From the NCBI RefSeq assembly GCF_023055435.1, contig NW_025964090.1:3224001-3288000 (forward strand): a DNA stretch of 64,000 nucleotides, read 5' to 3'. Each line of letters starts with the position of its first letter. Position 1 is the stretch's first letter. Source of the DNA: Haliotis rufescens. Its lineage: Eukaryota. Made by a program: the position numbers and the translations under genes. The notes beneath the pieces are model-generated. The model saw only the letters and a list, made by a program, of their open reading frames with translations, was not told the DNA's origin and did no database searches. Of the stretch, positions 12,882 to 57,536 are shown piece after piece.

Positions 12882-12889
12882 ATGTCAAG
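12882..12889 (+). CDS. GH26 gene 1, micro-exon 1 (ATG TCA AG|gtaagt)
   Basis: caacATG context, consensus donor, phase 2 matches the exon at 14571. The paralogs share this architecture. Confidence 0.7.
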
Positions 12890-13767
12890 GTAAGTCAGTA
12901 TTTCGGCCAGCTGATAATGAAATAAGATATGAATATTACTATATGAATGTTTTATACTGATTTCATGAATATTAGGCTGTTTATTTTTGGTTTAACGAGG
13001 AATAATTAAATTTTCGTTGTGGTCATGGAAATTCCTGCATTCTGATTAGCTGAATTGGTCACGTGTTATTGCATTCATTTCCCAATGAGTGTAAAAAATT
13101 AAGCCACGCCCACCGCGGCGCACTACTTTTATTACTTCGGAATGTCGGGGAATCCCAATATTACAGTCGAGGGAATTCCCTTTCTGCTCATGTGTATCGT
13201 CATGCACAGGACATTTAGCGACTTTCATGCATATTCATTGTCCAAACTACCCTTTGAAACCGAAGGCCGAGAATGAATGAAACAGCAAACGTGCAGGCTC
13301 GCTCGCCTGTTTTTTTCTCGCTCGCCCCGGTTCAACTTTCATGTCTTCGGGTTTCATTTATAACTAGCATTTCTCCAACTGTGATTTACCGTAATCAGGG
13401 AAGTAATGTTTGAATCACGCAGTAAATGACCATGTTATTTGAAACTGCCGCCTTCTCTCGGACATATTTCTTCCGGTTCGTTACAGTCTGACTGTTGCAG
13501 TTCTTTTCGCCTCTTGCCTTAATTGACAGGTCAAATGAACATTGTTTAAATCCCACTCTCCGTTGATTGGCTACTGACTGTGTAGGCGTGTCAAGTTATG
13601 TGCATAAATTAAACGATCACCTGATTCATGTCACGCCACTGTATGTATTCCTACACCTGGAATGTTTATCAATGTCGTCATTTTTGTCTGTTTTGATATA
13701 TGCAACTGTTTTGGGTTAAACTATTGTAGATAAAACATGTTTTACGTTGTCGAATTTCATTATAAGC

Positions 13768-13917
13768 ATTGACTGTATATTTTTTTCGGTTCATTGAGGT
13801 ATGAATCGAAAAGCCGATGTGCAAACTTTTGTAAGAATCCGCTACGCGGATTCATACAGTTTGCATATCGGCTTTTCGATTCATACCTCAATGAACCGAA
13901 AAAAATACACAGTCAAT
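13768..13917. repeat. ~150-bp near-perfect palindrome
   Basis: attgactg...cggttcattgaggtatgaatcgaaaagccgat with its reverse complement; central gaatccg-cta-cgcggattc hairpin. Confidence 0.9.
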
Positions 13918-14082
13918 CCTTAAATGAATACACATGTTTTCTTACACGAATTTCGTAAAATCAGTGCGAAAACGACGAATATAATGATTTCTTCCTTATC
14001 TAAGTTTTAGTAAATGCTGCAATGAAGATAACATTTTCATCTATTTAAAAACTGTCGAGAAGCTAACATATCAACATATGTT

Positions 14083-14368
14083 GAGTGAGTGAGTGAGTGA
14101 GTTGGGTTTAACGCCGCTTTTAACAGTATTCCAGTTATATCACGGCGTGTCACCTTAATGTGGGAGGAATGCCCGAAGTGATGCAGGGATCAGACAATAA
14201 CCACTTCGGTGAAACCCACGAGCTAGAGTATGGTGCTGATAAACCTAGAAACATTATCAGGGCGAACCGAGATTCGCACCCACAATCATAGGTCTCTGGC
14301 GTTCCCAAGGGACGCAACTCTGCACAGCGAATCACGGCGACTTAGACGACTGGGCCACCCGTGCCTCC
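14083..14368 (-). mobile_element. SINE family B
   Basis: Full-length reverse copy of 603-893. Further copies near 4860-5118, 6946-7203, 40085-40262 and 42330-42470. Confidence 0.85.
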
Positions 14369-14570: not shown

Positions 14571-14796
14571 GTATGTGTTTTTTGTCTTCGTGCTGCTACC
14601 AATTGTTTTGAGTCAACCCAATGACCGCAATGCCACCCCGGAGACTGTAGCTCTGTACAATCGCCTGAAGGAATTGGCAGCCAACCCTGACACCATTATG
14701 TTTGGTCAAAGTAGTGCCACGTGGATGGGGGCGTCTGGAGGACACGCCCCTTATGACGTCACAACCAACACCAGCAACCGTGGGTGGAGTTTCACG
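14571..14796 (+). CDS. GH26 gene 1, exon 2 (signal peptide plus N-terminus)
   Basis: YVFFVFVLLPIVLSQPNDRNATPETVALYNRLKELAANPDTIMFGQ...GWSFT is homologous to exon 2 of the paralogs and to the DxxATxETxxLY...MFG start of GH26 mannanases. tttatag acceptor, gtatgt donor. Confidence 0.88.
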
Positions 14797-15210
14797 GTAT
14801 GTCAGATGAAGAAATGTTCATTTAAGTTCTCGTTAAAGGGGGACTTTGCTCACTGATATAAAGTTCATTTTCAGTCAGTTTTTTTCAGTGTGAGGTTGTG
14901 ATTAGTGTCGAGCATCAGAAACTATTAGTTTGTGAAAGTGATTTATAAACACATCCTTCTGATATAGTCGACTGCCTCCGTGGTCTAGTGGTAGAGCGTC
15001 CGCCCGGAGAGCGGAAGGTCCGGGGTTCGATCAAATGACGTTTAAAGATGGTACTTGTTGTTACCCTTTCTGGCGCTTGGCATTAAGGGGTTTAAACAAG
15101 AACTGGTCGACTCGGAGTCAGTATACTGTGTCTGAGTGGGGTATTCATGTTAAACGGCGGCATGGTATCTCAGTGAGCTAGCACTGTAAGTAGGCATCAG
15201 TCCGGACTAG

Positions 15211-15539
15211 TGTAGCAGGGCGTGGAGTCATCCCACAGATGGCATCCTTACCTTGTCAGCTTGCTACATTGGCACCCAACGTGGGGCTGAGCACGTTCAT
15301 ATTAAATTTGAGCAAAATAAGCCTAAGCTTAGTACCCTACTATGCGGCCCGGGACGTGCCTTCTGTTGACGGGGAGTATGTAGCAGGGCGTGGAGGCATC
15401 CCACAGATGACATCCTTACCTTGTCAGCTTGCTGACGGGGTTAACCTCTTTTGTCATGTGGACAAGTCGTCCGACCTCGTATCAGAAGGTCCGTGGTTCG
15501 AGTCCCATCACGAGACTCAAAAATTTTATGGCCGCTACA
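15211..15539 (+). mobile_element. TRIM (miniature LTR retrotransposon) with tRNA-like sequence in the LTR, Helenus-like
   Basis: TG...CA LTRs at 15211-15268 (internally deleted) and 15379-15539. tRNA-Lys PBS tggcacccaacgtggggc at 15270. Short purine tract before the 3' LTR. 4-bp TSD ctag/ctac. B-box GGTTCGAGTCC in the LTR. Confidence 0.8.
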
Positions 15540-17687
15540 CTACTACAAGCAGCCACACAGAAACAGAAACACAAAAGACGTAAAAAGTTGGTACATGTTG
15601 TTACCCTGTCTGACGCTCGGCATCAAGGGGCTAAAACAAGGACAAAATCCTTGTCCATAAGCAAAAATATGACCTGAGTGGTCAGAAAGACAATTTTTTC
15701 CCAACTGTATACTTATTAAATTATATACAATTCTGTTCACTCCTTTATGAACAAGTTTATTTACACGTTTTGTATATTTTTATCGACTAACGGTAATGGC
15801 GGAATGGTCGGTACACATGAGAAAACGACAGTGTATATTTCCATTACATTTATGACGTTTATTGAATGAATTTATAACCATCATCACCCTAATCATCTCA
15901 ACGTTAATATCGTGTTACTCATATTTTATGCAGTGCCGCGGATTGCGAAATATGGCGAGATTATTAATGTGGTTACCGCGCTTCTCGATCTTTTTCTGCC
16001 ATGTTTGAACACCAAGCGAATGAAGGCAATTTTTTATTATACACCCATGTCACATACACGTAACTATTATTATATCAAACAGCCAATTTGAAAAAGAAAT
16101 CTGATCGGACTGGTCAGAAAGATTTACTAGTCCCCACTGTACAGTTATTAGCGTAAGAGTACTTACGTTTAGTCGGCCACGGAAGTTTTTTGTTCAAGTA
16201 TTGCATATGTTTATCGACTGTGTGTCATGGCGATTTAGCACGGCGCTATATACCAACTGACAGTGCAGATTGTCTTTTTGTTTATGATGCTGATTTACAG
16301 AAAATATTCAAATCAAAGATATGGAAAGATAGCTAAAATCGTTAATATTAAGTTGGTATAGTGTATATTTATGGGCAGGAGGTTCATGATGAAAACCTAA
16401 ACATTGAATGGCCAAGCCCGAAGTCATCGACAAGGCACGTTCGCATCATATCTGTGCCGCGATTTCGTGTCTACCGGTTGTCCTACATACTCGCCCGTTC
16501 AGACAAATAACTGCTACTTGTTTTCATAAGAAATGACTAAGAGTCATGTGTGATTGCACGTGTGAGTGACTTGCCCTAACTGTTTCACATTTTGTCGCAA
16601 ATGGAGATTTCAAAAGTGTGGCCACGACAACTAACGTGAGTCGACGCCATATTGTAAACAAATTGTGTCAAGGTCGGTTCCACATGTGGTAGCTCGGCCC
16701 CCGTTTCTGTCGATGGTACACGCGATACAAACATAATGCAACTACTGAAAACATCAACATAACTTCTACAATGATGACATCAATACCTTTTTGTATTTGG
16801 ATTAACCGCTTATGGATACGCTGTGCTGTAAAGTTCGATTTCGATTTGTTTTTCCTTTCATTGAAACTGTGATAATGGCGCTGTGATTGGTTTGCTGAAA
16901 TAGTATTTTCCATGAGTCTAATGTACATGGTACATGCTTTGATTGTAGAAGATAATTGATAACCAATTGTGTATGCATATATATCATCAAATACACATTA
17001 CTAATCTCTTCAGAAAATGGAATATATTATAGCTCGTTTTCAAACATTCTGCCATGGATATTAGATCAAAAATTAATATTAGATTCACAAATTATTTATG
17101 GACACTGTACTCTCGATTAACGTATGACAATCTAGACTATTGCAAGTCTTCAAGTCTTATTTGATATGTCATCTATAATGTCAGCAATGAGTAAAATTAA
17201 TTTTATTTCGTTACAATCCCTTTAAACCCAACTCACTCACTCACTCGGCAAGGGAACAGGCCCTTGTCTTGATCTCTCATCAGGTACATGATGTTTTCCA
17301 TGTGTCAATATACTGACTTCGAGTACCATCAATATCAGGATCTGATATCCCGCTCCAAACCTTCTTGTCAGGTGGCGTCCCCCTTAACGTTTTTCAAACA
17401 TTCCGTTATAATACATTTGATCAACCCAACAACATGTCGACGGAATCGAGTTTGAGCATTTGGTATGAACCCCTTGTAAACTCCAGTGAATGTCTGATTT
17501 CCAAGCAGTTTGTACATGGAGAGAAAATGCTTTTCCAATGACATGCTTGTCATGCTGCGAACAAGGCGTGTGGCTTTGTCTGGTCGTATACTGTAAGGTT
17601 TAAATATAACATGTACTTGTATGTTGCCCTTTCCAGCAAATGTACAGAGTTAACGTTCGGATTTGTGTAGTGACTGTTGGTTGCCGT

Positions 17688-17791
17688 CACAGGGCCACGT
17701 ATAGCCATACTATACTGACTGAACTGATTACATTAAAAAAATGTAATGTAATCAGTACAGTCAGTATAGTATGGCTATACGTGGCCCTGTG
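17688..17791. mobile_element. 104-bp fold-back MITE (P- or hAT-type)
   Basis: Almost entirely palindromic, with ends CACAGGG...CCCTGTG and 8-bp TSD gttgccgt. The empty site is visible in the other array units. Confidence 0.88.
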
Positions 17792-20700
17792 GTTGCCGTC
17801 ACATGATATGACTTGAATGCGTGTGCCTAGATGAGATCGCGTAGTTGTAAAAAGGAGAGGATTCTCCGTAACTATCATGTTGTGTGGTTAACACAGGTAT
17901 AATTAGTAAGTCTTTGTTTGGAAATTAAATCAGCAAGTCGCAGACGTAGTTATAACATGAGACCGCCTTTGTGCCATCAGTAACTAGTTGCTTGAAGGAA
18001 GTTATTTGGTGTATATTATAGAATGTTCACTTCATTTACTCGGCAGGTGCAACGATGCTTCAGATTGTTTTTAAATAGAATTCAGTTGTAAGTATGAGGG
18101 TCCTTTCCAAATACTCCCGCATGTATTACTGTAAAAACGCCAGTGGTCTACCCGAACTTGGTTTCGTTACTATGATTTGATGTGCGTTCTTTGCTGTAAA
18201 TTTTGTGTATTTTGTTTTTAACCTGTGCTAATTCATGACAGAGAGCATCTTATTGGGTTGATAAAGGGACCGTGTTTGTCTCAGTGGCTCGTATAATCAG
18301 GAGCGACGCTTGCCAAATAGTTACAGGGGTCCACAAACGGTTTACGACACAGCGGTGATGTCGTTAAGCAGGAATCTGTGACGTCAACAATGAAGCAACG
18401 TCATTGTTTATTGTGTCCCCATAAGTAATGACATCACAGAATAGATACGTCGACAATCATCTGACGTCATAGACAATCAGATTATCGGCAGTGTACGCTG
18501 CCGGAGGACGTGTTGCTTTGTGGGTGTATTACAAAAGCAGGTTTTGTTGTGACAGGAACGGGATTAGGCAGAGGTAAGTCAGAGGCCATATTCTTTGATG
18601 CGAAACCATTTTCTTTCAATATTCAAACAGACCTTCGCGTTATGCAGTGACTTGTGTTCACTGCAGACGACTGTTTAGATTTGGTGATTGTATACTAAAT
18701 TCCTCTGTCTAGTAATTTAGTATGAATAATAGATAAAGCTTATGGTGACGAGGAAAATGTTCTTGGCAGTGTCGGCATTGTGGTAGTGAATGAATGGGCT
18801 TGCTACGAGCGTTAAATTTGCTTTTAATTGAATGTGATTGGATAACTAGTATGTTGCCCTTTCCAGGAAATGTACAGAGTTAACGTTCGGATTTGTGTAG
18901 TGACTGTTGGTTGCCGTCACATAATATAACTTGAATGTGTGTGCCTAGATGAGATCGCGTAGTTGTTAAAAGGAAAGTATCACTTGTGTTGAGGTTGATG
19001 TTCAGATGGATCCATTCCTGTGGTGTATTGAAGTCGCAGTCAGTAAGGAAAAGCATTCTGTTGTCATCCTCCGTAACTATCATGTTGTGTGGTTAACACA
19101 GGTATAATTAGTAAGTCTTTGTTTGGAAATTAAATCAGCAAGTCGCAGACGTAGTTATAACATGATACCGCCTTTGTGCCATCAGTAACTATTTGCTTGA
19201 AGGAAGTTATTTGGTGTATATTATAGAATGTTCACTTCATTTACTCGGCAGGTGCAACGATGTTTCAGATTGTTTTTAAATAGAATTCAGTTGTAAGTAT
19301 GAGGGTCCTTTCCAAATACTCCCGCATGTATTACTGTAAACACGCCAGTGGTCTGTCTACCTGAGGTTGGTTTCGTTGCTAGGATTTGATGTGCGTTCTT
19401 TGCTGTAAATTTTGTGCATTTTGTTTGCAAACTGTGCTAATTCATGACATAGAGCATCGTATTGGGTTGATAAAGGGACCGTGTCTGTCTCAGTGGCCCG
19501 TATAATCAGGAGCGACCCTTGCCAAATAGTTACAGGTGTCCACAAACGGTTTACGACACAGTTGTGATGTCGTTAAGCAGGAATCTGTGACGTCAACAAT
19601 GAAGCAACGTCATTGTTTATTGTGTCCCCATAAGTAATGACATCACAGAATAGATACATCGACAATCAGCTGACGTCATAGACAATCAGATTATCGGCAG
19701 TGTACGCTGCCGGAGGACGTGTTGCTTTGTGGGTGTATTACAAAAGCAGGTTTTGTTGTGACAGGACCGGGATTAGGCAGAGGTAAGTCAGAGGCTATAT
19801 TCTTAGATGCGAAACCATTTTCTTTCAATATTCAAACAGACCTTCGCGTTATGCAGTGACGTGTGTTCACTGCAGACGACTGTTTAGATTTGGTGATTGT
19901 ATCCTAAATTCCTCTGTCTAGTAATTTAGTATGAAAAATAGACAAAGCTTATGGTGACCAGGAAAATGTTCTTGGCAGTGTCGGCATTGTGGTAGTGAAT
20001 GAATGGTCTTGCTACGAGCGTTAAATTTGCTTTTAATTGAATGTGATTGGATGACTAGTATGTTGCCCTTTCCAGGAAATGTACAGAGTTAACGTTCGGA
20101 TTTGTGTAGTGACTATTGGTTGCCGTCACATAACATGACTTGAATGTGTGTGCCTAGATGAGATGGCGTCGTTGTTAAAAGGAAAGTATCACTTGTGTTG
20201 AGGTTGATGTTCAGATGGATCCATTCCTGTGGTGTATTGAAGTCGCAGTCAGTAAGGAAAAGCATTCTGTTGTCATCCTCCGTAACTATCATGTTGTGTG
20301 GTTAACACAGGTATAATTAGTAAGTCTTTGTTTGGAAATTAAATTAGCAAGTCGCAGACGTAGTTATAACATGAGACCGCCTTTGTGCCATCAGTAACTA
20401 TTTGCTTGAAGGAAGTTATTTGGTGTATATTATAGAATGTTCACTTCATTTACTCGGCAGGTGCAACGATGTTTCAGATTGTTTTTAAATAGAATTCAGT
20501 TGTAAGTATGAGGGTCCTTTCCAAATACTCCCGCATGTATTCCTGTAAAAGCGCCAGTGGTCTACCTGAGGTTGGTTTCGTTGCTATGATTTGATGTGCG
20601 TTCTTTGCTGTAAATTTTGTGTATTTTGTTTTTAACCTGTGCTAAATCATGACAGAGAGCATCGTATTGGGATGATAAAGGGACCGTGTTTGTCTCAGTG

Positions 20701-23700
20701 GCCCGTATAATCAGGAGCGACGCTTGCCAAATAATTACAGGGGTCCACAAACGGTTTAGGACACAGCGGTGATGTCGTTAAGCAGGAATCTGTGACGTCA
20801 ACAATGAAGCAACGTCATTGTTTATTGTGTCCCCATAAGTAATGACATCACAGAATAAATACGTCGACAATCAGCTGACGTCATAGACAATCAGATTATC
20901 GGCAGTGTACGCTGCCGGAGGACGTGTTGCTTTGTGGGTGTATTACAAAAGCAGGTTTTGTTGTGACAGGAACGGGATTAGGCAGAGGTAAGTCAGAGGC
21001 CATATTCTTTGATGCAAAACCATTTTCTTTCAATATTCAAACAGACCTTCGCGTTATGCAGTGACTTGTGTTCACTGCAGACGACTGTTTAGATTTGGTG
21101 ATTGTATACTAAATTCCTCTGTCTAGTAATTTAGTATGAAAAATAGACAAAGCTTATGGTGACCAGGAAAATGTTCTTGGCAGTGTCGGCATTGTGGTAG
21201 TGAATGAATGGTCTTGCTACGAGCGTTAAATTTGCTTTTAATTGAATGTGATTGGATAACTAGTATGCTGCCCTTTCCAGGAAATGTACAGAGTTAACGT
21301 TCGGATTTGTGTGGTGACTATTGGTTGCCGTCACATAATATAACTTCAATGTGTGTGCCTAGATGAGTTCGGGTAGTTGTTAAAAGGAAAGTATCACTTG
21401 TGTTGAGGTTGGTGTTCAGATGGATCCATTCCTGTGGTGTATTGAAGTCGCAGTCAGTAAGGAAAAGCATTCTGTTGTCATCCTCCGTAATTATCATGTT
21501 GTGTGGTTAACACAGGTATAATTAGTAAGTCTTTGTTTGGAAATTAAATCAGCAAGTCGCAGACGTAGTTGTAACATGAGACCGCCTTTGTGCCATCAGT
21601 AACTATTTGCTTGAAGGAAGTTATTTGGTATATGTTATAGAATGTTCACTTCATTTACTCGGCAGGTGCAACGATGCTTCAGATTGTTTTTAAATAGAAT
21701 TCAGTTGTAAGTATGAGGGTCCTTTCCAAATACTCCCGCATGTATTACTGTAAACACGCCAGTGGTCTGTCTGCCTGAGGTTGGTTTCGTTGCTATGATT
21801 TGATGTGCGTTCTTTGCTGTAAATTTTGTGCATTTTGTTTGCAAACTGTGCTAATTCATGACAGAGAGCATCGTATTGGGTTGATAAAGGGACCGTGTCT
21901 GTCTCAGTGGCCCGTATAATCAGGAGCGACCCTTGCCAAATAGTTACAGGGGTCCACAAACGGTTTAGGACACAGTTGTGATGTCGTTAAGCAGGAATCT
22001 GTGACGTCAACAATGAAGCAACGTCATTGTTTATTGTGTCCCCATAAGTAATGACATCACAGAATAGATACATCGACATTCAGCTGACGTCATAGACAAT
22101 CAGATTATCGGCAGTGTACGCTGCCGGAGGACGTGTTGCTTTGTGGGTGTATTACAAAAGCAGGTTTTGTTGTGACAGGACCTGGATTAGGCAGAGGTAA
22201 GTCAGAGGCTATATTCTTAGATGCGAAACCATTTTCTTTCAATATTCAAACAGACCTTCGCGTTATGCAGTGACGTGTGTTCACTGCAGACGACTGTTTA
22301 GATTTGGTGATTGTATCCTAAATTCCTCTGTCTAGTAATTTAGTATGAAAAATAGACAAAGCTTATGGTGACCAGGAAAATGTTCTTGGCAGTGTCGGCA
22401 TTGTGGTAGTGAATGAATGGTCTTGCTACGAGCGTTAAATTTGCTTTTAATTGAATGTGATTGGATGACTAGTATGTTGCCCTTTCCAGGAAATGTACAG
22501 AGTTAACGTTCGGATTTGTGTAGTGACTATAGGTTGCCGTCACATAACATGACTTGAATGTGTGTGCCTAGATGAGATGGCGTCGTTGTTAAAAGGAAAG
22601 TATCACTTGTGTTGAGGTTGATGTTCAGATGGATCCATTCCTGTGGTGTATTAATTGCAGTCAGTAAGGAAAAGCATTCTGTTGTCATCCTCCGTAACTA
22701 TCATGTTGTGTGGTTAACACAGGTATAATTAGTAAGTCTTTGTATGGAAATTAAATCAGCAAGTCGCAGACGTAATTATAACATGAGACCGCCTTTGTGC
22801 CATCAGTAACTATTTGCTTGAAGGAAGTTATTTGGTATATGTTATAGAATGTTCACTTCATTTACTCGGCATGTGCAACGATGCTTCAGATTGTTTTTAA
22901 ATAGAATTCAGTTGTAAGTATGAGGGTCCTTTCCAAATACTCCCGCATGTATTACTGTAAACACGCCAGTGGTCTGTCTACCTGAGGTTGGTTTCGTTGC
23001 TATGATTTGATGTGCGTTCTTTGCTGTAAATTTGTGCATTTTGTTTGCAAACTGTGCTAATTCATGACAGAGAGCATCGTATTGGGTTGATAAAGGGACC
23101 GTGTCTGTCTCAGTGGCCCGTATAATCAGGAGCGACCCTTGACAAATAGTTACAGGGGTCCACAAACGGTTTACGACACAGTTGTGATGTCGTTAAGCAG
23201 GAATCTGTGACGTCAACAATGAAGCAACGTCATTGTTTATTGTGTCCCCATAAGTAATGACATCACAGAATAGATACGTCGAAAATCAGCTGACGTCATA
23301 GACAATCAGATTATCGGCAGTGTACGCTGCCGGAGGACGTGTTGCTTTCGGGATGTATTACAAAAGCAGGTTTTGTTGTGACAGGAACGGGATTAGGCAG
23401 AGGTAAGTCAGAGGCTATATTCTTTGATGCGAAACCATTTTCTTTCAATATTCAAACAGACCTTCGCGTTATGTAGTGACGTGTGTTCACTACAGACGAC
23501 TGTTTAGATTTGGTGATTGTATACTAAATTCCTCTGTCTAGTAATTTAGTATGAAAAATAGACAAAGCTTATGGTGACCAGGAAAATGTTCTTGGCAGTG
23601 TCGGCATTGTGGTAGTGAATGAATGGTCTTGCTACGAGCGTTAAATTTGCTTTTAATTGAATGTGATTGGATGACTAGTATGTTGCCCTTTCAGAGTTAC

Positions 23701-43175: not shown

Positions 43176-43337
43176 GTGAGTGAGTATGGTTTTACGCCTC
43201 TTTTAGTAATATTTCAGCAATATTACGGCGGGGGACACCAAAAATGGGCTTCACACATTGTACCCATGTCGAGAATCGAACCCAGGTCTTCGGCGTGACG
43301 AACGAACGCTTTAACCACTAGGCTACCCGACCGCCCC
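43176..43337 (-). mobile_element. tRNA-derived SINE, family A
   Basis: Near-identical to 33-201. TSD actgatgccttta. Confidence 0.9.
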
Positions 43338-43450: not shown

Positions 43451-43685
43451 ACACATACTAGCTGTAGGTCTTCTCCTGGGGTCTGCGACTTGTGGCCCAG
43501 TGGATCAGCAGGCTACCCAAGAGACGAGGAACTTATTCGGAAACATGAAAGACCTTGCTCGTAACTCCTCCAAGGTGATGTTTGGACATCATGAAGACAC
43601 ATGGATTGGAGCACAGGGAGGCCATCCTCCGTATATGGTACAGACTCTGACCCATGATGGAAACATACAGGCCTACATATTTTGG
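43451..43685 (+). CDS. GH26 gene 2, exon 2
   Basis: HILAVGLLLGSATCGPVDQQATQETRNLFGNMKDLARNSSKVMFGHHEDTW. cccacag acceptor. Probable GC donor (TGG|gcaagt) at the paralogous position. Confidence 0.85.
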
Positions 43686-44356: not shown

Positions 44357-45316
44357 GCACAACAGGCCAAAAATGGTGACCCTGATGAACTCTCCGACAC
44401 AAAAGGTGTTACTGGACAATATCCTGCAGTATCTGGTTTTGACTTTGCTCAGTTCTCTGATGAGCATATCATAAGCCTTACATATTTGGCAAAGCTTGCT
44501 TATGCTCGAGGGCAAATAGTCACCATATCTCAGCATCTCAACAACCCCGTGACTGGTGGTTCCCCATGGGTAAACAAGGACACGGGAGATGTTCTTCACA
44601 CAGTCAGAAGGATCCTGCCAGGCGGGGACAAGAATCACATCTACAAGCAGAATCTGGACAAGATTGCCGACTGGGCTCTCAACTTCACTGACTCAAGCAG
44701 CAAACCAATTCCTTTTGTTTTCCGTATCCTTCATGAGCTAAATGGCGGATGGTTCTGGTGGGGACTTTCTACAGAGACCCAGAATACTGCAAACGATATA
44801 ACTAGTCTGTATAGGTACATCGTGACCTACTTAAGAGACGTACGAGGTGCCCATAACATCCTTTACTGCGTCAGTCCAGATAAGTTTAAGACTAAAGACG
44901 ACTACCTGAAGGTGTACCCAGGAGACGACTACGTTGATGTACTGGGCACCGACTACTATTACATCAATGAGAACCAACCTCCTGTGTCAGATCTGAAGAG
45001 AACATTGGATGAATTGGTTGAGATTGCTGAAGCCAGAGATAAAATCCCCGCATTGACAGAAGTAGGTATGTTCAACAATGGTATCGATCGTGTGCACAAC
45101 TTCTGGAATGACCACGTTTTAGACATCCTGAAGACCGACTCCAAAGCAGCAAGAATTGCCTATATTCTCACATGGACCAATCATTGTTATGGTAACCACA
45201 AGTGCGAGCTCTGGATGCCTTACAAAGGCCACCCTGCAGAGGCGGACTTCAGAAACAACTTCTTCAATGATCCGATGACTTACTTTGCTGATCGAATTGG
45301 TGGCATGTACAACTAA
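44357..45316 (+). CDS. GH26 gene 2, catalytic exon 3 (beta-mannanase-like)
   Basis: Open from the ttctag acceptor. RILHELNGGWFWWG, YPGDDYVDVLGTDYY, ALTEVG, PYKGHPAEADF. AATAAA at 45330. Joined protein 399 aa. Confidence 0.93.
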   Translation, partial: AQQAKNGDPDELSDTKGVTGQYPAVSGFDFAQFSDEHIISLTYLAKLAYARGQIVTISQHLNNPVTGGSPWVNKDTGDVLHTVRRILPGGDKNHIYKQNLDKIADWALNFTDSSSKPIPFVFRILHELNGGWFWWGLSTETQNTANDITSLYRYIVTYLRDVRGAHNILYCVSPDKFKTKDDYLKVYPGDDYVDVLGTDYYYINENQPPVSDLKRTLDELVEIAEARDKIPALTEVGMFNNGIDRVHNFWNDHVLDILKTDSKAARIAYILTWTNHCYGNHKCELWMPYKGHPAEADFRNNFFNDPMTYFADRIGGMYN

Positions 45317-45991: not shown

Positions 45992-46157
45992 GGGGCGGTC
46001 GGGTAGCCTAGTGGTTAAGGCGTTCGCTCGTCACGCAGTAGACCCGGGTTCGATTCCCGACATGGGTACAATGTGTGAAGCCCATTTCTGGTGTCCCCCG
46101 CCGTGATATTGCTGGAATATTGCTAAAAGCGGCGTAAAACCATACTCACTCACTCAC
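45992..46157 (+). mobile_element. tRNA-derived SINE, family A
   Basis: Full length, TSD tcgaagccattg. Partial copies also near 3080-3185, 12490-12552, 48463-48531 and 49126-49200. Confidence 0.9.
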
Positions 46158-46699
46158 TCGAAGCCATTGATGTGGGTTCTGGATTATATACAAAGGCCAC
46201 CCTGCTGAAGCGGACTGCTGAATTATTTCTTTAATGGTCCCATGACTATATACCATGATGAACAATTATGAGGGCACTGTCCGTTCGTTTTTTAATGTCT
46301 CGGCTTCATGACGGCGACCTGAAAATGATCGTCCATTCGGCTTACCAGAAACCAATGATCGTGGGTTCGAATTCCAGATTCGCCCAGAAAATGTTGTGCT
46401 GTTTTTCAGCACCATACCCGTGTTCGTGGTTTTAACCAAAGCGGATAACCAAAAACCTGTATCATTTGGGGCTTTCATCCCACATCGAATCACGTGAACT
46501 ATCAAAATGTGGTTCGGTTTTTATGTTTTAAATGAACGAATTGCTTACATATAAATATACCAAGTTACGTTGCAAAATATGTTTGATAATAAACGGTACA
46601 TGATCGACAGAAATGAACAATGTACACATGAAGTATTTGAGACAAGTGGAATTAATACCTTGATTCTCAAAACCCCAAAGGATTTGCTATTTGAAATCT

Positions 46700-48338: not shown

Positions 48339-48349
48339 ATGGCAGCCAG
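48339..48349 (+). CDS. GH26 gene 3, micro-exon 1 (ATG GCA GCC AG|gtacca)
   Basis: Lies downstream of TATAAATA (48274) and an Inr-like TCATTC (48309). Phase 2 fits the exon at 49493. Confidence 0.55.
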
Positions 48350-49492
48350 GTACCAGTACGACATTTTGCGTATTTTATTAGATTTTAATTTACATATAAA
48401 TCATTCTATCAATAATACGTCAAATCTGGAAACATCTTCCACATGTCTGAAATAAAACGTTTGAGTGAGTGAGTTTTGTTTTACGCCGCTTTTAGCAATA
48501 TTCCAGAAATATCACGGCGGGGGACACCAGAATAAAACGTTTGAAAGCTTTACTAAGGCCTTGAATGTGGTAACCTTGATAAAACCATTTTTAGCAAGAC
48601 ATGTATGACGCTCTTTGAAATGTTCGAAGAAGAGCATGATTAATTTACCTCAAAGCTGTAGACCAAAGGCTGAAGCTGTTGGAATATTGTTCGACATCAG
48701 GCAAAAAAAGAAAACGAAACATATGTTTCTCATTGCCGTGCGGATCATTCACAAATATACGTGGGAGGGAGATAAAGTGAGGAGGGAGATATGACTTTTT
48801 ATTGTATAGTTCACCTGGCTGAAATTCAACTGAGCTTATGTCGTGCCCTGTTTTTCGGTAATCCGTGATCCGTCGTAAACATCTTCTCCACAGAAACCAC
48901 TGGACCAAAAAAGTAAAATGTCATATGTTAGTTCCAACAAATGATAACAACCCGAATTGTTCAACAATTTCAAATCCGATTTTCAATATGGCCGCCGCGA
49001 CTGCCATATTGATAAACCTATTTATGACCCATGGGGTCATATGGGAATGAAATTTGGCATAGTTGTTGTTCTTGTATTGTATATATGTTCAGTGTTTTAA
49101 TGATATTTTGAATTTTGACTTTGTCAGGTGTCCCACGCCGTGATATTGCTGGAATATTGCTAAAAGCGGCGTAAAACCATACTCACTGACTCACTCACTC
49201 CATTACATTATGCCAAGGGCATACTGGCTCTGTAAACAAAGTCGGTTTCACATGAATTTGATTTCATTTTATTATCAATAGAAGTAACAGACGCGCAGGA
49301 TTTAAAGTGACGCGCTGCCGATGTCCGGGGACCTTTTTCCTATTGTAAGCCTTAAACAGGCGTCTTGTCACAACCCAGTGTCAAAAGACTGCTGCCTTCT
49401 ATCTGTATGTGATGTGTGTTTGTTTCAGGTGTACGTGCAGATATTCATCTCTGTTGCTTTGTCAGTACTAATTTGTCATATTTTGGTTGCAG

Positions 49493-49724
49493 TTCAACTT
49501 TTTGGATATTGTTCTTTGGGCTTTTCGTAAGTGCCTCTTGTCTACCCACGGACCAGCATGCTACGAACGAGACCCGTATTCTCTACAGGAATCTTTTGAT
49601 GATGGCCAGAAATCCAAACGTCTTCATGTTTGGTCATGCCAGCGACACATGGACCGGTTCATCTGGTGGCCACGCCCCTTATGCCATCATTACAAATACG
49701 AGTAATCAAGGTTGGAAATATACA
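49493..49724 (+). CDS. GH26 gene 3, exon 2
   Basis: STFWILFFGLFVSASCLPTDQHATNETRILYRNLLMMARNPNVFMFGHASDTW...GWKYT. ttgcag acceptor, gtatgt donor. Confidence 0.88.
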
Positions 49725-50676: not shown

Positions 50677-51630
50677 GTTGAACAGGCAATGACAGATTCC
50701 CCTGATGAGTTGTCCGACGTGAAGAGCGTGACTGGGCAGTACGCAGCAGTCATTGACTTCGGGATGTGGCAGCTGAGTCATGACCGAAAAATAATTCTGT
50801 CCCATCTTATCAAGACCGCCCACAAGCGTGGTGTGATTGCAACTCTGAGCCAGCATCTGTATAACCCCATCACAGGGGGAAGACCGTGGGTGGAAGAGGA
50901 CAATGGTACTGTCCTCCATACCGTCAGGCGTCTCTTACCAGGAGGAGATACCAATTGGAAGTTCCAGAAGAATCTCGACACGATCGCCGATCTCGCTCAT
51001 AACCTGACGGACGACCAGGGGAAGCTTATACCTGTTCTCTACAGACCTCTTCACGAGCTTAATGGAGACTGGTTTTGGTGGGGATTGGGAAATAAGGTTC
51101 AAAACACAGAAGATGACCTGAAATCATTTTATCGATACATAGTTACGTATCTACGTGATCATAAGAATGTTCACAACTTCCTGTATGTTTACAGCCCGGA
51201 CAAGTTCACGGACAAAACAGATTATCTCAAGGTGTACCCTGGTGATGATTATGTTGACGTTATAGCCACGGATTTCTACTACAAGACGCCAGCAGATAAG
51301 TCAAGTGACTTTCATACGGCAGTCAAGCAGATAGTGGAGATAGCCGAATCCAGAAATAAAATAGTTGCAGTGTCAGAGGCTGGAATTTTTGATAACGCCA
51401 TTGATAAGCAGACTAATTTCTGGAACGAAAAGATCCTTGATGCCATACAGAATGACCCCATCACTCGACGTATTGCATATATCCTGACATGGGCAAATCA
51501 GTGCAACAACAATGACTGTTCCGTGTGGGTGCCTTATAAAGGCCACCCTGCTGAAAATGACTTCAGACAAAACTTCTTTAATAACCCCATGACCCTGTTT
51601 GGAAGTGACATCCCAAACATGTACAAATGA
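50677..51630 (+). CDS. GH26 gene 3, catalytic exon 3 (beta-mannanase-like)
   Basis: RPLHELNGDWFWWG, YPGDDYVDVIATDFY, VSEAG. AATAAA at 51708. Joined protein 398 aa. Confidence 0.93.
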   Translation, partial: VEQAMTDSPDELSDVKSVTGQYAAVIDFGMWQLSHDRKIILSHLIKTAHKRGVIATLSQHLYNPITGGRPWVEEDNGTVLHTVRRLLPGGDTNWKFQKNLDTIADLAHNLTDDQGKLIPVLYRPLHELNGDWFWWGLGNKVQNTEDDLKSFYRYIVTYLRDHKNVHNFLYVYSPDKFTDKTDYLKVYPGDDYVDVIATDFYYKTPADKSSDFHTAVKQIVEIAESRNKIVAVSEAGIFDNAIDKQTNFWNEKILDAIQNDPITRRIAYILTWANQCNNNDCSVWVPYKGHPAENDFRQNFFNNPMTLFGSDIPNMYK

Positions 51631-52732: not shown

Positions 52733-52780
52733 TTGAGACATGAAGCTTGCATAATACCATTTGAAATGGATCCTATCACA

Positions 52781-52791
52781 ATGACAATAAG
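52781..52791 (+). CDS. GH26 gene 4, micro-exon 1 (ATG ACA ATA AG|gtaaag; in-frame upstream ATG at 52766)
   Basis: TATAAAG at 52726. Phase 2 fits the exon at 55191. Confidence 0.6.
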
Positions 52792-54933: not shown

Positions 54934-55190
54934 TATTAGTGAGATCAGCTATCACCTGATTTGGTGAAGTCAAAATGGTTTATGATACATGTTCCAGGAG
55001 AAAAGGTTTTGGGTTTTCAGGAAAAGGTGGGCATGAGGCCGTTTCGGGGTTTTCAATGCCTTGCAATCACCTTTTTAGTTAATATACTAGCAACCAAATA
55101 CAACTGTGCTGAGGATAAAATCAAATACCCAGTTCCTTTCACAGTGCAGCATATTTATCAACCAATAACCCAAACGACTTTCTATCGCAG

Positions 55191-55422
55191 CTACATATTC
55201 ACAACATTGTTGCTACCTGTCCTCCCATATGGTTTGTGTGCGCCAGTGGATCAGCATGCAACGCCAGAGACACGTCACCTCTACAAGAACCTCATGACCA
55301 TGGCCAGAAACCCGAATGCCATCATGTTTGGTCATTCCAGCGACACATGGACTGGTGCATATGGTGGACATGCCACTTATGACGTCGTCACAAATACGAC
55401 AAACAAAGGTTGGAGATATACA
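55191..55422 (+). CDS. GH26 gene 4, exon 2
   Basis: YIFTTLLLPVLPYGLCAPVDQHATPETRHLYKNLMTMARNPNAIMFGHSSDTW...GWRYT. tcgcag acceptor, gtaagt donor. Confidence 0.88.
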
Positions 55423-56582
55423 GTAAGTACCTCTTTGACGACATTTCATTTTGCTGCTGTGCTGACGTTACATAGTCATGTGTATTTGATCAACTTCAGT
55501 CATGTTTGAATGAGAAGAAGTATAGGCATAAAATGACTCGATAGTGACTATTAACTGAGTGAGTGAATGTTGTTTTATGTCAATGTTTGTTGTTTATGAC
55601 TGCGGTCTAGACCAGACAATCCAGTGACTGATATCATGTGCATCGATCCATGCAGTTGGGATATGATAACATGCACCAACAAAGTGAGCAAGCCGATACC
55701 GATCCAGTTAGTCGCCTCTGGGTTGCTGAAGACCTATTCTGACCCAGAACTTCGCGGGTATTTACGTCAGAGTCAACAGTATTCAAGCTATATTATTATG
55801 ACATGTAAATGACCGAATAATTCTGGGCCAGTCACACTTGCTAATAGCACCAGTGTTAAACAAGATGCCAAGTCGCACCTACAATAGTCGGATCCGATGT
55901 TTTATGGTCCGGAACAGACCATCCAGTGATTCATTTTATGAGTATCGACCAACGTCGGCGGTATACGGTTGATGACACACAATCAACCAATTCACAGAGT
56001 CTGACTACCTGATCCATTTAGTTGTATCGTATGACAAACACAGGCTGTGTGCGACCAATGCAAACCCGCAATTTCCTTGGGGACAGTTCCAGCACATATT
56101 TTGGATAGCGAGGTTCTTTTCTGTGCTGATATCTGTGCTGGCTCCACAGGGGAATCTCAAATGAAATCATTGTTGACAAATCATTATGCTCAATATCAAT
56201 AGATGTTAAGAAGGAAGATAGTATTGCACACGTTTAACCGACCAGTGTTTGTTTGTTTATTTCTTGTTTAACGCCGCACTTAGCAATATTCAAGCTTATA
56301 TGACGGCGGTCTGTAAATAATCGAGTCTGGACCAGACAATCCAGTGACTGACACCATGAACATCGATCCACACAATTGGGATACGATGACATGCATCAAA
56401 CCAAGTCAGCGAGCCTGACCACCCGATTCCGTTAGTCACATCTTACGACAAGCATAGTCGCCTTTTACGGCAAGCATTGGTGGCTGAATATCTATTCTAC
56501 CCCGAATCTTCACGGGTCACCAGTGTTAATAAAATTAACAAACCCTGAACCCTGGTGATCTTTGTCGTTCATATACTTACAG

Positions 56583-57536
56583 GCTGAACAGGCAATGAAA
56601 GATTCCCCTGATGAGTTGTCCGACGTGAAGAGCGTGACTGGGCAGTACGCAGCAGTCATTGACTTAGGGATGTGGCAGCTGAGTGATGACCGAAACATAG
56701 TTGTATCCCATCTTGTCAAGACCGCCCTCAAGCGTGGTGTGATTGCAACTCTGAGCCAGCATCTGTATAACCCCATCACAGGGGGAAGACCGTGGGTGGA
56801 AGAGGACAATGGTACTGTCCTCCATACCGTCAGGCGTCTCTTACCAGGAGGAGATACCAATTGGAAGTTCCAGAAGAATCTCGACACCATCGCCGAAGTT
56901 GCTCATAACCTGACGGACGACCAGGGGAAGCTTATACCTGTTCTCTACAGACCTCTTCACGAGCTTAATGGAGACTGGTTTTGGTGGGGATTGGGAAATA
57001 AGGTTCAAAATACAGAAGATGATCTGAAATCCTTTTATCGATACATAGTTACGTATCTACGTGATCATAAAAAAGTTCACAACTTCCTGTATGTTTTCAG
57101 CCCGGACAAGTTCACGGACAAAGCAGATTATCTCAAGGTGTATCCTGGTGATGATTATGTTGATGTTATAGCCACGGATTTCTATTACACATCACCTTCG
57201 GTTAAGACAAGTGACTTTTCTAGAATAGTGAAACAGCTAGTGGAGATAGCCGAGTCAAGAAACAAGATAGCGGCAGTGTCAGAGGCCGGGCTTTTTAACA
57301 ATGGCATTGATCAGCAGACTAATTTCTGGAACGAAAAGATTCTTGATGTCATCAAAACTGACCCCACTAGTCGCCGTATTGCATATATTCTCACATGGGC
57401 AAACCATTGTGGCAACAATAAGTGCGAATTGTGGGTGCCTTACAAAGGTCACCCTGCTGAGAATGACTTCAGGAACAACTTCTTCAATGACCCCATTACC
57501 ATGTTTGGGGATGATATTCCAGATATGTTCAAGTGA
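56583..57536 (+). CDS. GH26 gene 4, catalytic exon 3 (beta-mannanase-like)
   Basis: Same catalytic motifs as gene 3. ttacag acceptor. AATAAA at 57554. Joined protein 398 aa. Confidence 0.93.
   Translation, partial: AEQAMKDSPDELSDVKSVTGQYAAVIDLGMWQLSDDRNIVVSHLVKTALKRGVIATLSQHLYNPITGGRPWVEEDNGTVLHTVRRLLPGGDTNWKFQKNLDTIAEVAHNLTDDQGKLIPVLYRPLHELNGDWFWWGLGNKVQNTEDDLKSFYRYIVTYLRDHKKVHNFLYVFSPDKFTDKADYLKVYPGDDYVDVIATDFYYTSPSVKTSDFSRIVKQLVEIAESRNKIAAVSEAGLFNNGIDQQTNFWNEKILDVIKTDPTSRRIAYILTWANHCGNNKCELWVPYKGHPAENDFRNNFFNDPITMFGDDIPDMFK

What the first reader, a model, noticed from the sequence alone, without database searches (positions are those of the whole stretch)
12882..57536. Four tandem, intron-containing, secreted GH26 glycanase genes in an animal genome: candidate domesticated bacterial transfer
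Seen: four paralogs with both catalytic Glu motifs (HELNGxWFWWG; xSE/TExG), signal peptides and identical intron positions, three of them followed by AATAAA. They sit between MTO1 and an SGSH-like gene and are interspersed with host SINEs, so contamination is unlikely. Known: GH26 (beta-1,4-mannanase, beta-1,3-xylanase, lichenase) is mainly bacterial and fungal, and the characterised mollusc mannanases are GH5. The DxxATxET...MFGH...SDVKxVTGxYPA...PYxGH layout resembles Bacteroidota-type Man26A. Inference: a horizontal transfer gained two 5' introns, kept an unbroken ~950-bp catalytic exon, and then expanded, probably for digesting algal mannan or xylan.
Basis: partly seen in the sequence, partly recalled or inferred. 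Interest (0 to 1): 0.88.

Follow-up and report, generated by a model that had tools for sequence, protein, structure and literature searches.

The report
Abalone GH26 mannanase gene cluster
Red abalone carries a tandem cluster of four spliced, secreted GH26 beta-mannanase-type genes that belong to a family found in molluscs but no other animals and probably came from bacteria very long ago; the genes are already annotated, so this is a real but only moderately new finding.

Summary
The window is from Haliotis rufescens. It carries four three-exon GH26 (PF02156) genes on the + strand. Both catalytic Glu motifs are present, and both introns sit at the same position and phase in every copy. MTO1 and a sulfatase gene flank the cluster, and abundant host SINEs lie among the genes. 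RNA contigs from four runs show intron 2 of copy D spliced.

All four genes are already RefSeq models named "mannan endo-1,4-beta-mannosidase-like". Two published surveys already count GH26 in molluscs.

Copy A is damaged in this assembly. It lacks the conserved C-terminal tail and an AATAAA, and its intron 2 is 26 kb long and filled with a long-period satellite. The genome holds about nine GH26 places in all.

The family is mollusc-wide: gastropods, bivalves and a chiton form one clade (SH-aLRT 99-100). No other eukaryote appeared in an exhaustive search. The nearest relatives are prokaryotic CjMan26C-like enzymes at 30-40% identity.

A single ancient bacterial transfer into the mollusc stem is the most economical reading. 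However, the trees neither nest the clade inside bacteria (AU p 0.82 for the non-nested tree) nor point to Bacteroidota as donor. Fold and sequence favour mannan over xylan.

Novelty: new member of a known kind. Interest is moderate.

The parts
12882..12889 (+). Copy A exon 1 (ATG TCA AG, then donor GTAAGT). Encodes M, S and two bases of the R codon.
   Evidence: Matches RefSeq XP_046343050.1 (P0122) and the H. cracherodii ortholog P0004, which begins 'MSR..'.
14571..14797 (+). Copy A exon 2: the rest of the signal peptide plus the N-terminal DxxATPET..MFGQ..GGHAPY..GWSFT segment.
   Evidence: Acceptor ..tttatag|G in phase 2; donor ACG|gtatgt in phase 0.
14798..40821 (+). Copy A intron 2, 26,024 bp. 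It holds the long-period tandem array and a Tc1/mariner remnant.
   Evidence: intron length; array; transposase remnant.
18199..38118 (.). Long-period tandem repeat array with units of about 1205 and 866 bp, 95-100% alike and GC skew +0.18. It is interrupted at about 32.9-35.9 kb. The same unit is arrayed elsewhere in the genome.
   Evidence: flat GC 0.405, skew 0.18; 16 in-register copies; copies at C312:1.58 Mb and C57; 343 first-look candidates. TRF missed it because the period exceeds 500.
38968..39420 (+). Degenerate Tc1/mariner-type transposase ORF (HTH plus a DDE_3 fragment) inside copy A intron 2.
   Evidence: ORF; PF13384 E 8e-6; PF13358 E 8e-4, below cut-off.
40822..41697 (+). Copy A exon 3: the GH26 catalytic exon, truncated. 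It ends ..QLWTPYNIVS* and lacks the conserved KGHPAENDF..F..T.F tail. No AATAAA within 800 nt.
   Evidence: The H. cracherodii ortholog P0004 and a Logan contig ORF (P0124) keep the tail.
42465..42537 (-). Inverted relic of a D-like exon 2 (LCAPVEQHASPETRHLYKNLM..), 89% nucleotide identity to 55233-55296.
42784..42788 (+). Copy B exon 1 (ATG AG, then donor GTGAGA).
   Evidence: Matches XP_046343054.2 (P0127), which begins 'MR..'.
43175..43337 (-). Host tRNA-derived SINE copy inside copy B intron 1.
   Evidence: Family size.
43451..43685 (+). Copy B exon 2. The donor is GCAAGT, so this is a GC-AG intron.
   Evidence: translation contained in P0127; H. asinina ortholog P0006 reads through ..AYIFW|AQQ.
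44357..45316 (+). Copy B exon 3: GH26 catalytic exon, 319 codons. AATAAA at 45330.
45992..46160 (+). Host tRNA-derived SINE copy. Its head scores as tRNA in Rfam.
   Evidence: RF00005, 30.6 bits at 45997-46068; at least 2718 candidate copies, 97-99% identity.
46171..46215 (+). Relic of a GH26 C-terminal tail (CGFWIIYKGHPAEAD), B-like, with no gene attached.
48339..48355 (+). Copy C exon 1 (MAARY plus CA). An alternative donor 6 nt upstream gives isoform X2 (MAAS..).
49493..49724 (+). Copy C exon 2.
50677..51630 (+). Copy C exon 3: GH26 catalytic exon. AATAAA at 51708.
52766..52791 (+). Copy D exon 1 as in the RefSeq model (MDPITMTI plus AG). The RNA contigs I laid barely cover it.
   Evidence: In one search the bin 52684-52867 has depth 0-2.6. 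Contigs that end at 55189 carry 20-38 further unplaced letters.
55191..55422 (+). Copy D exon 2.
   Evidence: RNA contigs cover 55189-55422 in all four runs.
56583..57536 (+). Copy D exon 3: GH26 catalytic exon. AATAAA at 57554 and 57613.
   Evidence: The joint 55422->56583 (GT..AG, skips 1160) is seen in runs X1, X5, X3 and X8.
3175..8238 (-). 5' exons of the MTO1/GidA homolog (upstream neighbour, divergent orientation).
   Evidence: PF01134, E 2.5e-13, 3e-10 and 1.5e-8 on three exons.
61721..63971 (+). First exons of a sulfatase gene: a signal peptide, then ..[19 protein letters not shown]. It runs off the window. It resembles SGSH only by my recollection of the motif.
   Evidence: PF00884, E 1.5e-6.

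Best explanation
The region is a tandem array of four paralogous host genes of Haliotis rufescens. Each encodes a secreted, single-domain glycoside hydrolase of family 26 of about 400 residues.

What the enzymes are. Each is a (beta/alpha)8-barrel retaining enzyme. The acid/base is the Glu of the HELNG motif and the nucleophile is the Glu of the (S/T)E(A/V/C)G motif. It most likely cleaves beta-1,4-mannan or glucomannan from dietary algae in the gut lumen.

State of the copies. Copies B, C and D look intact. Copy A in this assembly has lost its conserved C-terminal strand/helix and its poly(A) signal in a local rearrangement. Its second intron has been inflated to 26 kb by a satellite array, so it is probably disabled.

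Origin of the array. The array arose by duplications in the abalone lineage after its split from limpets and before the Haliotis radiation.

Origin of the family. The genes belong to a GH26 clade that is shared by gastropods, bivalves and a chiton and is seen in no other eukaryote. Its nearest relatives are prokaryotic CjMan26C-like mannanases. The most economical origin is one transfer from a bacterium into the mollusc stem lineage. The gene then acquired a eukaryotic signal peptide and two introns, gained lineage-specific insertions and a Cys pair, duplicated early, was lost in several lineages and expanded in grazers.

What is shown: gene structure, family membership, fold, splicing of copy D, mollusc monophyly, and the distribution.

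What is inferred: secretion, substrate, digestive role, the transfer itself and its date.
For: Family and fold:
- PF02156 at E 1e-42 to 3e-44 on each exon 3.
- Full-length similarity to Cellvibrio japonicus CjMan26C (2vx4, E 1e-54), with both catalytic Glu aligned.
- The AF2 model has pLDDT 95.2. Foldseek TM is 0.78-0.89 to CjMan26A/C, CfMan26A and BoMan26A, against 0.51 for lichenase and 0.48 for beta-1,3-xylanase.

Host genes:
- Canonical introns with the same phases in all copies, and in dispersed paralogs on other contigs.
- Host SINE inside B intron 1.
- MTO1 and sulfatase flanks.
- All four copies are RefSeq models with orthologs in three other Haliotis genomes. The accessions run consecutively in H. 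cracherodii.

Expression: a GT..AG joint 55422->56583 appears in contigs of four runs from three studies.

Selection: C versus D gives dN/dS 0.27 at dS 0.28.

Copy A damage. Tail positions P372, G375, F386 and T392 are invariant across 15 mollusc sequences.

Clade and distribution:
- Molluscs form one clan with SH-aLRT 99-100 in three trees.
- In an exhaustive search of 1.84 billion representatives, every representative above 320 bits is molluscan, apart from one multi-domain metagenome protein whose single domains score 153-188 bits.
- Queries with Haliotis, with a mollusc profile and with Pinctada each give a score gap: molluscs first, then only prokaryotes.
- PF02156 occurs only in Lottia among 21 metazoan genomes (PMC6011409 supplement).
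- Fungal GH26 is far more distant (3zm8, E 2e-9).

Digestive role: GH26 is expressed in scallop hepatopancreas according to PMC7560691 Table 1.
Against: - No enzyme of this clade has been assayed. The closest solved relative, CjMan26C, is (from my own recollection) an exo-acting mannobiohydrolase, so the mode of action and the exact substrate are open.
- The tissue of origin of the RNA runs is unknown, and only copy D was laid.
- The trees do not nest molluscs inside a bacterial lineage. A tree with all 62 sampled prokaryotes held together is at least as likely (lnL +18.6, p-AU 0.82), and the mollusc stem is long (0.5-0.6). Direction and donor therefore rest on distribution alone.
- Most metagenome relatives carry no taxonomy, so an unrecognised eukaryotic relative cannot be excluded.
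- Copy A's truncation could be an assembly or haplotype peculiarity.
Confidence: 0.72

Rival explanations
1. Vertical inheritance. A CjMan26C-like GH26 gene was already present in an early animal or eukaryote ancestor, and every sampled lineage except Mollusca lost it. No transfer is involved.
For: The AU test does not reject molluscs as sister to all sampled prokaryotic members of the subfamily. The mollusc stem is long. The genes are fully eukaryotic in structure. The family is at least as old as crown Mollusca.
Against: It needs many independent losses. No other eukaryote appears in the clade or near it in searches of 5.8 and 1.84 billion sequences. PF02156 is absent from 20 other metazoan genomes. 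Fungal and protist GH26 are far more distant than bacterial ones. The subfamily is spread over at least 10 bacterial phyla.
Confidence: 0.13
2. The proteins are GH26 enzymes for another algal glycan, or they serve a non-digestive role. Candidate substrates are beta-1,3-xylan, mixed-linkage xylan or glucan, or lichenan.
For: GH26 includes xylanases and lichenases. Abalone eat red algae that are rich in beta-1,3-xylan. Molluscs already have GH5_10 mannanases. The clade carries its own insertions near the N-terminal loops.
Against: Sequence and fold are much closer to mannanases: E 1e-54 and TM 0.78-0.89. Lichenase scores E 1e-10 and TM 0.51. Beta-1,3-xylanase 2ddx scores TM 0.48 at 11% identity. 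The residues conserved with the mannanase group are kept, namely R209, H212, E213, W218, Y287, E320 and W358.
Confidence: 0.12
3. Bacterial contamination or a recent, abalone-specific transfer.
For: The nearest non-mollusc relatives are bacterial.
Against: Spliceosomal introns, host flanking genes, host SINEs inside an intron, spliced RNA, the same gene series in four Haliotis assemblies, only 30-40% identity to any prokaryote, and orthologs across three mollusc classes.
Confidence: 0.01

Closest known systems
Cellvibrio japonicus CjMan26C (PDB 2vx4) and CjMan26A (1gvy/1j9y), bacterial GH26 beta-mannanases
   Same: The full-length architecture is shared, including the N-terminal D-x-x-A-T-x-E-T..L(F/M)FGH segment, the HE(x)NGDWFWWG acid/base motif and the (S/T)E(x)G nucleophile motif. 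E is 1e-54. The TIM-barrel fold matches at TM 0.78-0.85.
   Different: Only 31-33% identity. The mollusc proteins carry a 13-15 residue insert (GGHxPY..) before the GW motif, a 3-residue insert after WWG and a Cys-x(4-6)-Cys pair near the C-terminus. They have a eukaryotic signal peptide instead of a lipoprotein signal or linker, and two introns. Activity is untested.
Mollusc GH26 genes already catalogued (Lottia gigantea 4, Chlamys farreri 1, Pinctada fucata 1; PMC7560691, PMC6011409) and the RefSeq 'mannan endo-1,4-beta-mannosidase-like' models
   Same: The window's four genes are XP_046343050.1, XP_046343054.2, XP_046343055.2/056.2 and XP_046330291.2. They fall in one clade with the Lottia, Patella, Littorina, bivalve and chiton genes.
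   Different: Those papers only count the family. In the library I could search, I found no analysis of its origin, gene structure, tandem organisation or biochemistry.
Animal GH5_10 endo-beta-1,4-mannanases (Haliotis discus hannai HdMan, Aplysia AkMan, Mytilus MeMan5A)
   Same: Probably the same substrate and digestive role. Both are secreted clan GH-A barrels.
   Different: A different GH family with no detectable sequence relationship here. GH5_10 enzymes are biochemically characterised; no animal GH26 is (PMC5576741).
Horizontally acquired plant-cell-wall hydrolases of animals (for example the coffee berry borer GH5 mannanase HhMAN1, nematode and beetle cellulases and pectinases)
   Same: A bacterial-type polysaccharide hydrolase is fixed in an animal genome. 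It has acquired introns and a signal peptide, and it has expanded by tandem duplication in a herbivore.
   Different: Here the event would be far older (mollusc stem) and the donor is unresolved. The evidence is distributional rather than a nested phylogeny.

Membership tests
Glycoside hydrolase family 26 (Pfam PF02156, clan GH-A) | Significant match to the family profile above the curated threshold | tested here: met
   All four exon-3 translations score 147-152 bits against a cut-off of 20.2, with E 1e-42 to 3e-44.
Glycoside hydrolase family 26 (Pfam PF02156, clan GH-A) | Two catalytic glutamates: the acid/base in the H-E-x-N-G..W motif and the nucleophile in the x-(S/T)-E-x-G motif | tested here: met
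   Both are present in A-D. They align with the HEHNGDWFWWG and ALTETG motifs of CjMan26C. E320 is invariant and E213 is conserved in at least 90% of 92 sequences.
Glycoside hydrolase family 26 (Pfam PF02156, clan GH-A) | (beta/alpha)8 barrel fold | tested here: met
   The AF2 model of copy D has pLDDT 95.2 and pTM 0.92. The top 15 Foldseek hits are all GH26 mannanases or a design built on one, with TM 0.71-0.89.
GH26 beta-1,4-mannanase group (as opposed to beta-1,3-xylanase or lichenase) | Closer in sequence and structure to characterised mannanases than to the other GH26 specificities | tested here: met
   Mannanases score E 1e-54 to 1e-37. The lichenase CtLic26A scores E 1e-10. TM is 0.78-0.89 for mannanases, 0.51 for lichenase, 0.51 for AlXyn26A and 0.48 for Vibrio beta-1,3-xylanase.
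GH26 beta-1,4-mannanase group (as opposed to beta-1,3-xylanase or lichenase) | Hydrolysis of beta-1,4-mannan or glucomannan | not testable with these tools
   Needs a recombinant enzyme assay.
Horizontally transferred gene domesticated in an animal | Physically integrated in the host genome and processed as a host gene | tested here: met
   Introns, host flanks, SINE inside an intron, spliced RNA and conserved orthologs in four Haliotis genomes.
Horizontally transferred gene domesticated in an animal | Patchy distribution: absent from other animals and eukaryotes while common in the putative donor domain | tested here: met
   Only molluscs lie above the score gap. In a 21-genome survey only Lottia has the family. 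Prokaryotic homologs occur in at least 10 phyla. Caveat: most metagenome hits are unnamed.
Horizontally transferred gene domesticated in an animal | Recipient clade nested within the donor clade in a rooted phylogeny | tested here: inconclusive
   The outgroup-rooted tree puts molluscs inside a 100%-supported ingroup and, at SH-aLRT 84, with Paenibacillus, Actinomycetota and Hydrogenedentota. The AU test does not reject all prokaryotes held together (p 0.82).
Secreted protein | N-terminal cleavable signal peptide | tested here: inconclusive
   A hydrophobic stretch of 12-18 residues follows the Met in A-D, with small residues before the conserved (P)xDQxAT start. In the model, residues 1-30 have low pLDDT and form a lone helix at 3-16. 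No signal-peptide predictor was available.

The most novel reading that the evidence does not exclude
A single bacterial GH26 gene entered the mollusc stem lineage more than half a billion years ago. That would make it one of the oldest retained bacterium-to-animal enzyme transfers. It then acquired an animal-specific insert and a disulfide. It has since been lost (cephalopods, oysters, some mussels) or amplified (limpets, abalone: about 9 loci) in step with algal grazing. This second, uncharacterised mannanase system works beside GH5_10 and may have a distinct specificity for algal mannans.
Probability: 0.45. Interest if true: 0.6.

Novelty: new member of a known kind. Interest (0 to 1): 0.45.

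Why it matters
All biochemically characterised animal mannanases are GH5_10. An expressed, selectively maintained GH26 family in molluscs is therefore a second, untested route to mannan digestion in marine grazers. It bears on abalone nutrition and aquaculture feeds.

If the mollusc-stem transfer is right, this is an unusually old case of a bacterial carbohydrate-active enzyme kept by animals. It comes with a clear record of domestication steps: a signal peptide, two introns (one missing in one paralog), lineage-specific inserts and tandem expansion.

The value is tempered. The genes are already annotated and counted in published surveys. The transfer cannot be shown by nesting with present sampling.

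Tried and rejected
I could not fetch genomic DNA of Lottia, Littorina or the chiton, so intron positions outside Haliotis were not read. There is only indirect support. Several truncated database models (chiton P0016, Patella P0142, Batillaria P0141, Mercenaria P0227) start at or within a few residues of the exon-3 boundary. Lottia P0014 has a 19-residue insert exactly at the intron-2 position.
- The 'careful' IQ-TREE run (ultrafast bootstraps) did not finish in two 288-s calls. Support values are therefore SH-aLRT from quick searches.
- Tandem Repeats Finder found nothing in 12-40 kb because the period exceeds 500. The repeat finder did find the array.
- The search of earlier findings was blank by place and by words.
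- Read laying allows one call, so only copy D was tested. Splicing of A (across 26 kb), B (GC-AG) and C is untested, and D exon 1 was not covered.
- P0228 (2457 aa, 379 bits) looked like a possible non-mollusc close relative, but its single domains score only 153-188 bits.
- Contamination and a recent transfer were rejected (see the rival explanations).
- A Bacteroidota donor was rejected as unsupported.
Searches used exon 3 by reference, or full-length database proteins that the tools returned.

Full report
**What is there**

The window is Haliotis rufescens contig C312:3224001-3288000. A tblastn of the largest ORF finds four paralogous catalytic exons on the + strand. Their pairwise protein identities to D are C 86%, A 66% and B 60%. 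Each translation matches Pfam PF02156 (Glyco_hydro_26) at E 1e-42 to 3e-44.

The N-terminal segment is encoded by a separate upstream exon in each copy, and a tiny first exon supplies the ATG. It comprises a signal peptide, then (P)xDQxAT(P)ET..L(Y/F)..MFGH..GGHxPY..GWxxT.

Instead I translated each exon by reference and checked that it is contained in the RefSeq proteins the search tools returned. The models are:
- A: 12882-12889 / 14571-14797 / 40822-41697 (369 aa)
- B: 42784-42788 / 43451-43685 / 44357-45316 (399 aa)
- C: 48339-48355 / 49493-49724 / 50677-51630 (400 aa, with an alternative donor 6 nt upstream giving isoform X2)
- D: 52766-52791 / 55191-55422 / 56583-57536 (403 aa)

Intron 1 is always phase 2 within the signal peptide. 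Intron 2 is always phase 0 after GWxxT (AYIFW in B). The introns are GT-AG except B intron 2, whose donor is GCAAGT, the usual GC-AG form.

AATAAA follows B, C and D but not A.

MTO1/GidA exons lie on the minus strand (PF01134). A sulfatase with the CSPSR motif lies on the plus strand (PF00884).

A 172-bp SINE has a tRNA-like head that scores as tRNA in Rfam. It sits inside B intron 1 and between B and C. It has at least 2718 candidate copies at 97-99% identity across the genome.

**Expression**

Contigs of four public runs were laid on 52500-57999. The runs come from three studies and carry three organism codes. All four contain the joint 55422->56583 with GT..AG ends, skipping 1160 bases, with up to 255 letters on the shorter side. 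Intron 2 of copy D, or of its near-identical ortholog in close relatives, is therefore removed in RNA.

Contigs that stop at 55189 carry 20-38 further letters that were not placed. This is consistent with a short exon 1 ending in AG. The RefSeq exon 1 at 52766 itself has almost no coverage.

Two runs also hold a contig that runs unspliced from 54120 into exon 2 and is then spliced to exon 3. That is either a retained intron 1 or an alternative start.

The tissue is unknown, and only one read-laying run was allowed.

**Already annotated**

All four copies are RefSeq proteins named "mannan endo-1,4-beta-mannosidase-like". A is XP_046343050.1, B is XP_046343054.2, C is XP_046343055.2/056.2 and D is XP_046330291.2. 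Orthologs of each occur in H. cracherodii (consecutive accessions XP_071093122-126), H. rubra and H. asinina. The four-gene array therefore predates the divergence of these abalone species.

**Copy A is damaged here**

Its ORF ends ..QLWTPYNIVS*. The H. cracherodii ortholog (P0004) and a Logan contig ORF that is 98-99% identical (P0124) continue ..PYKGHPAENDFR(N/D)NFFNDPLTIFAGD... Tail positions P372, G375, F386 and T392 are invariant among 15 mollusc sequences.

Recognisable homology to the other copies stops between 41649 (nucleotide level) and 41684 (protein level). It is followed by dispersed repeats, a SINE-like piece and an inverted 64-bp fragment 89% identical to D exon 2.

Intron 2 of A is 26,024 bp. 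It contains a tandem array of units of about 1205 and 866 bp that are 95-100% alike (18.2-32.8 kb and 35.9-38.1 kb). The same unit is arrayed at two other genomic places. The intron also holds a degenerate Tc1/mariner ORF.

A further tail relic (CGFWIIYKGHPAEAD) lies at 46171-46215.

I regard A as probably non-functional in this haplotype. This is inferred, not shown.

**The family in the genome**

Six-frame search finds nine GH26 places:
- the four in the window;
- one with an in-frame TGA about 7.5 kb past the window end on the opposite strand (the RefSeq model P0018 lacks the acid/base region);
- one 1.3 Mb upstream on the same contig;
- two on C124 (one a fragment);
- one on C146.

The paralogs at C312:1.90 Mb and on C124 have both introns at the same positions and phases. 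The most divergent paralog, on C146, has intron 2 but no intron 1: its ATG is contiguous with exon 2.

C versus D gives dN/dS 0.27 at dS 0.28. All other pairs are saturated at synonymous sites.

**What the protein is**

The closest solved structures by sequence are Cellvibrio japonicus CjMan26C (E 1e-54 over residues 24-402), CjMan26A, Cellulomonas fimi Man26A and Bacteroides ovatus BoMan26A. The two catalytic Glu motifs align.

An AlphaFold2 model of D, built on a 92-sequence alignment, has mean pLDDT 95.2. Foldseek returns the same mannanases at TM 0.78-0.89. The GH26 lichenase reaches TM 0.51, the mixed-linkage xylanase AlXyn26A 0.51 and the Vibrio beta-1,3-xylanase 0.48 at 11% identity. 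Mannan or glucomannan is therefore the favoured substrate.

Endo versus exo action cannot be called. From my own recollection, CjMan26C is an exo-acting mannobiohydrolase.

Compared with prokaryotic relatives, the mollusc proteins have a 13-15 residue insert (GGHxPY..) just before the GW motif. Intron 2 lies immediately after that motif. They also have a 3-residue insert after WWG, and gastropods and the chiton have a Cys-x(4-6)-Cys pair near the C-terminus. The bacterial lipoprotein-type leaders and linkers are replaced by short eukaryotic signal peptides.

**Distribution**

With exon 3 of D as query, the ranking runs Haliotis spp., Patella, Lottia, the chiton Liolophura sinensis, Littorina and Batillaria. 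After that come prokaryotes, almost all bacteria, at 36-42% identity.

A profile of 15 mollusc sequences gives the same gap: molluscs 327-668 bits, bacteria 319 bits or less.

An exhaustive HMMER scan of 1.84 billion cluster representatives finds 6815 GH26 representatives. Those above 320 bits are all molluscan, now including Pinctada imbricata and Mercenaria mercenaria. The one exception is a multi-domain metagenome protein whose single domains score 153-188 bits.

A Pinctada query adds Mytilus coruscus and three scallops. It again shows no other eukaryote.

Published surveys agree. PF02156 occurs only in Lottia among 21 metazoan genomes (PMC6011409, supplement file 3). GH26 counts in seven molluscs are scallop 1, pearl oyster 1, Lottia 4, and none in Pacific oyster, two mussels or octopus, with hepatopancreas expression in scallop (PMC7560691). 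All characterised animal mannanases are GH5_10 (PMC5576741).

**Phylogeny**

Three maximum-likelihood trees (LG+C20+F+G4, quick search) each recover the mollusc sequences as one side of a branch. SH-aLRT is 99-100 and the stem is 0.5-0.6 substitutions per site.

Inside the clade, A, (C, D), B and the paralogs L005, L006 and L007 form an abalone-specific group sister to a limpet group. Older lineages are:
- a Haliotis + Lottia + Patella lineage;
- Caenogastropoda;
- the C146-type paralog;
- the chiton;
- the bivalves.

At least two or three paralog lineages therefore predate gastropod diversification.

Named prokaryotic relatives from species-representative genomes are 30-38% identical and come from at least 10 phyla. 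Most are Bacteroidota. Others are Paenibacillus, Actinomycetota, Gemmatimonadota, Balneolota, Cellvibrionaceae, Hydrogenedentota, Planctomycetota, Spirochaetota and Kiritimatiellota.

I rooted the tree with seven distant GH26 paralogs taken from a Paenibacillus and a Cellvibrio genome. Molluscs plus 62 prokaryotic sequences form a 100%-supported ingroup. The free tree places molluscs with Paenibacillus, Actinomycetota, Hydrogenedentota and an unnamed metagenome protein at SH-aLRT 84.

However, the constrained tree with all 62 prokaryotes together is slightly better (lnL +18.6) and is not rejected (p-AU 0.82). Neither nesting nor a donor is established.

**Reading**

The genes are ordinary, well-integrated host genes of a mollusc-wide GH26 family. 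One ancient transfer from a bacterium into the mollusc stem explains the data with far fewer events than vertical descent with loss everywhere else. The relevant facts are:
- the clade's restriction to Mollusca among eukaryotes;
- its membership in a subfamily that is otherwise prokaryotic and phylogenetically widespread;
- the much greater distance of fungal GH26.

I put that reading at roughly 0.8 and vertical descent at roughly 0.13. My overall confidence in the combined explanation (host GH26 mannanase array, A disabled, ancient transfer) is 0.72.

The tandem expansion is abalone-specific. The pattern of loss in carnivores and some filter feeders, and gain in grazers, fits a digestive role. 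That link is inferred.

**Novelty and score**

The gene family, its annotation and its presence in molluscs are known. Its origin, gene structure, tandem organisation and biochemistry have not been treated in the literature I could search.

I classify it as a new member of a known kind, namely bacterial-type polysaccharide hydrolases domesticated in animals. Interest is 0.45.

Noticed in passing
window 18199-38118: Long-period tandem array inside an intron, with units of about 1205 bp and a variant of about 866 bp, 95-100% identical and strong GC skew (+0.18). The same unit is tandemly arrayed at C312:1.584-1.587 Mb and on C57, with 343 first-look candidates genome-wide. It looks like a macrosatellite family.
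   Followed up: partly
window 54120-55422 (copy D intron 1): RNA contigs in runs X1 and X5 run unspliced from 54120 into exon 2 and are then spliced to exon 3. An in-frame ATG at 55033 (MRPFRGFQCLAITFLVNILA..) would give an alternative N-terminus with its own hydrophobic stretch. This could be a retained intron or an alternative promoter. The same contigs lack 252 bp (54594-54845) relative to the reference, an indel polymorphism.
   Followed up: no
G000:C312:3295579-3296511 (-), about 7.5 kb beyond the window end (locus L006/L011): A fifth GH26 copy of the cluster lies on the opposite strand beyond the start of the sulfatase gene. It has an in-frame TGA. The RefSeq model XP_048237312.1 (P0018, 242 aa) skips the region holding the acid/base Glu. 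It is probably a pseudogene.
   Followed up: partly
P0007 (Patella vulgata), alignment A1 column of E213: One limpet paralog has LHKLNGGWFWWG, with Lys in place of the acid/base Glu. It may be a catalytically inactive GH26 paralog.
   Followed up: no
G000:C146:4578196-4579143 (locus L008/L013): The most divergent abalone paralog (ortholog of P0017) lacks intron 1, its ATG being contiguous with exon 2, but keeps intron 2. So either intron 1 was gained after this paralog split off, or this paralog lost it.
   Followed up: partly
window 11049-11429 (+) and 9594-10175 (-): Two unannotated ORFs lie between MTO1 and copy A. One is Cys-rich (..CKCTTGRCSSFRCSCAENIMGCSFGCSC..). Neither has a Pfam match. 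They may be transposon-derived.
   Followed up: partly
P0121 versus P0006/P0131 (H. asinina): In H. asinina the ortholog of copy A is reported on a different large scaffold (71.8 Mb) from the orthologs of B and D (106 Mb). The cluster may be split in that species or assembly.
   Followed up: no
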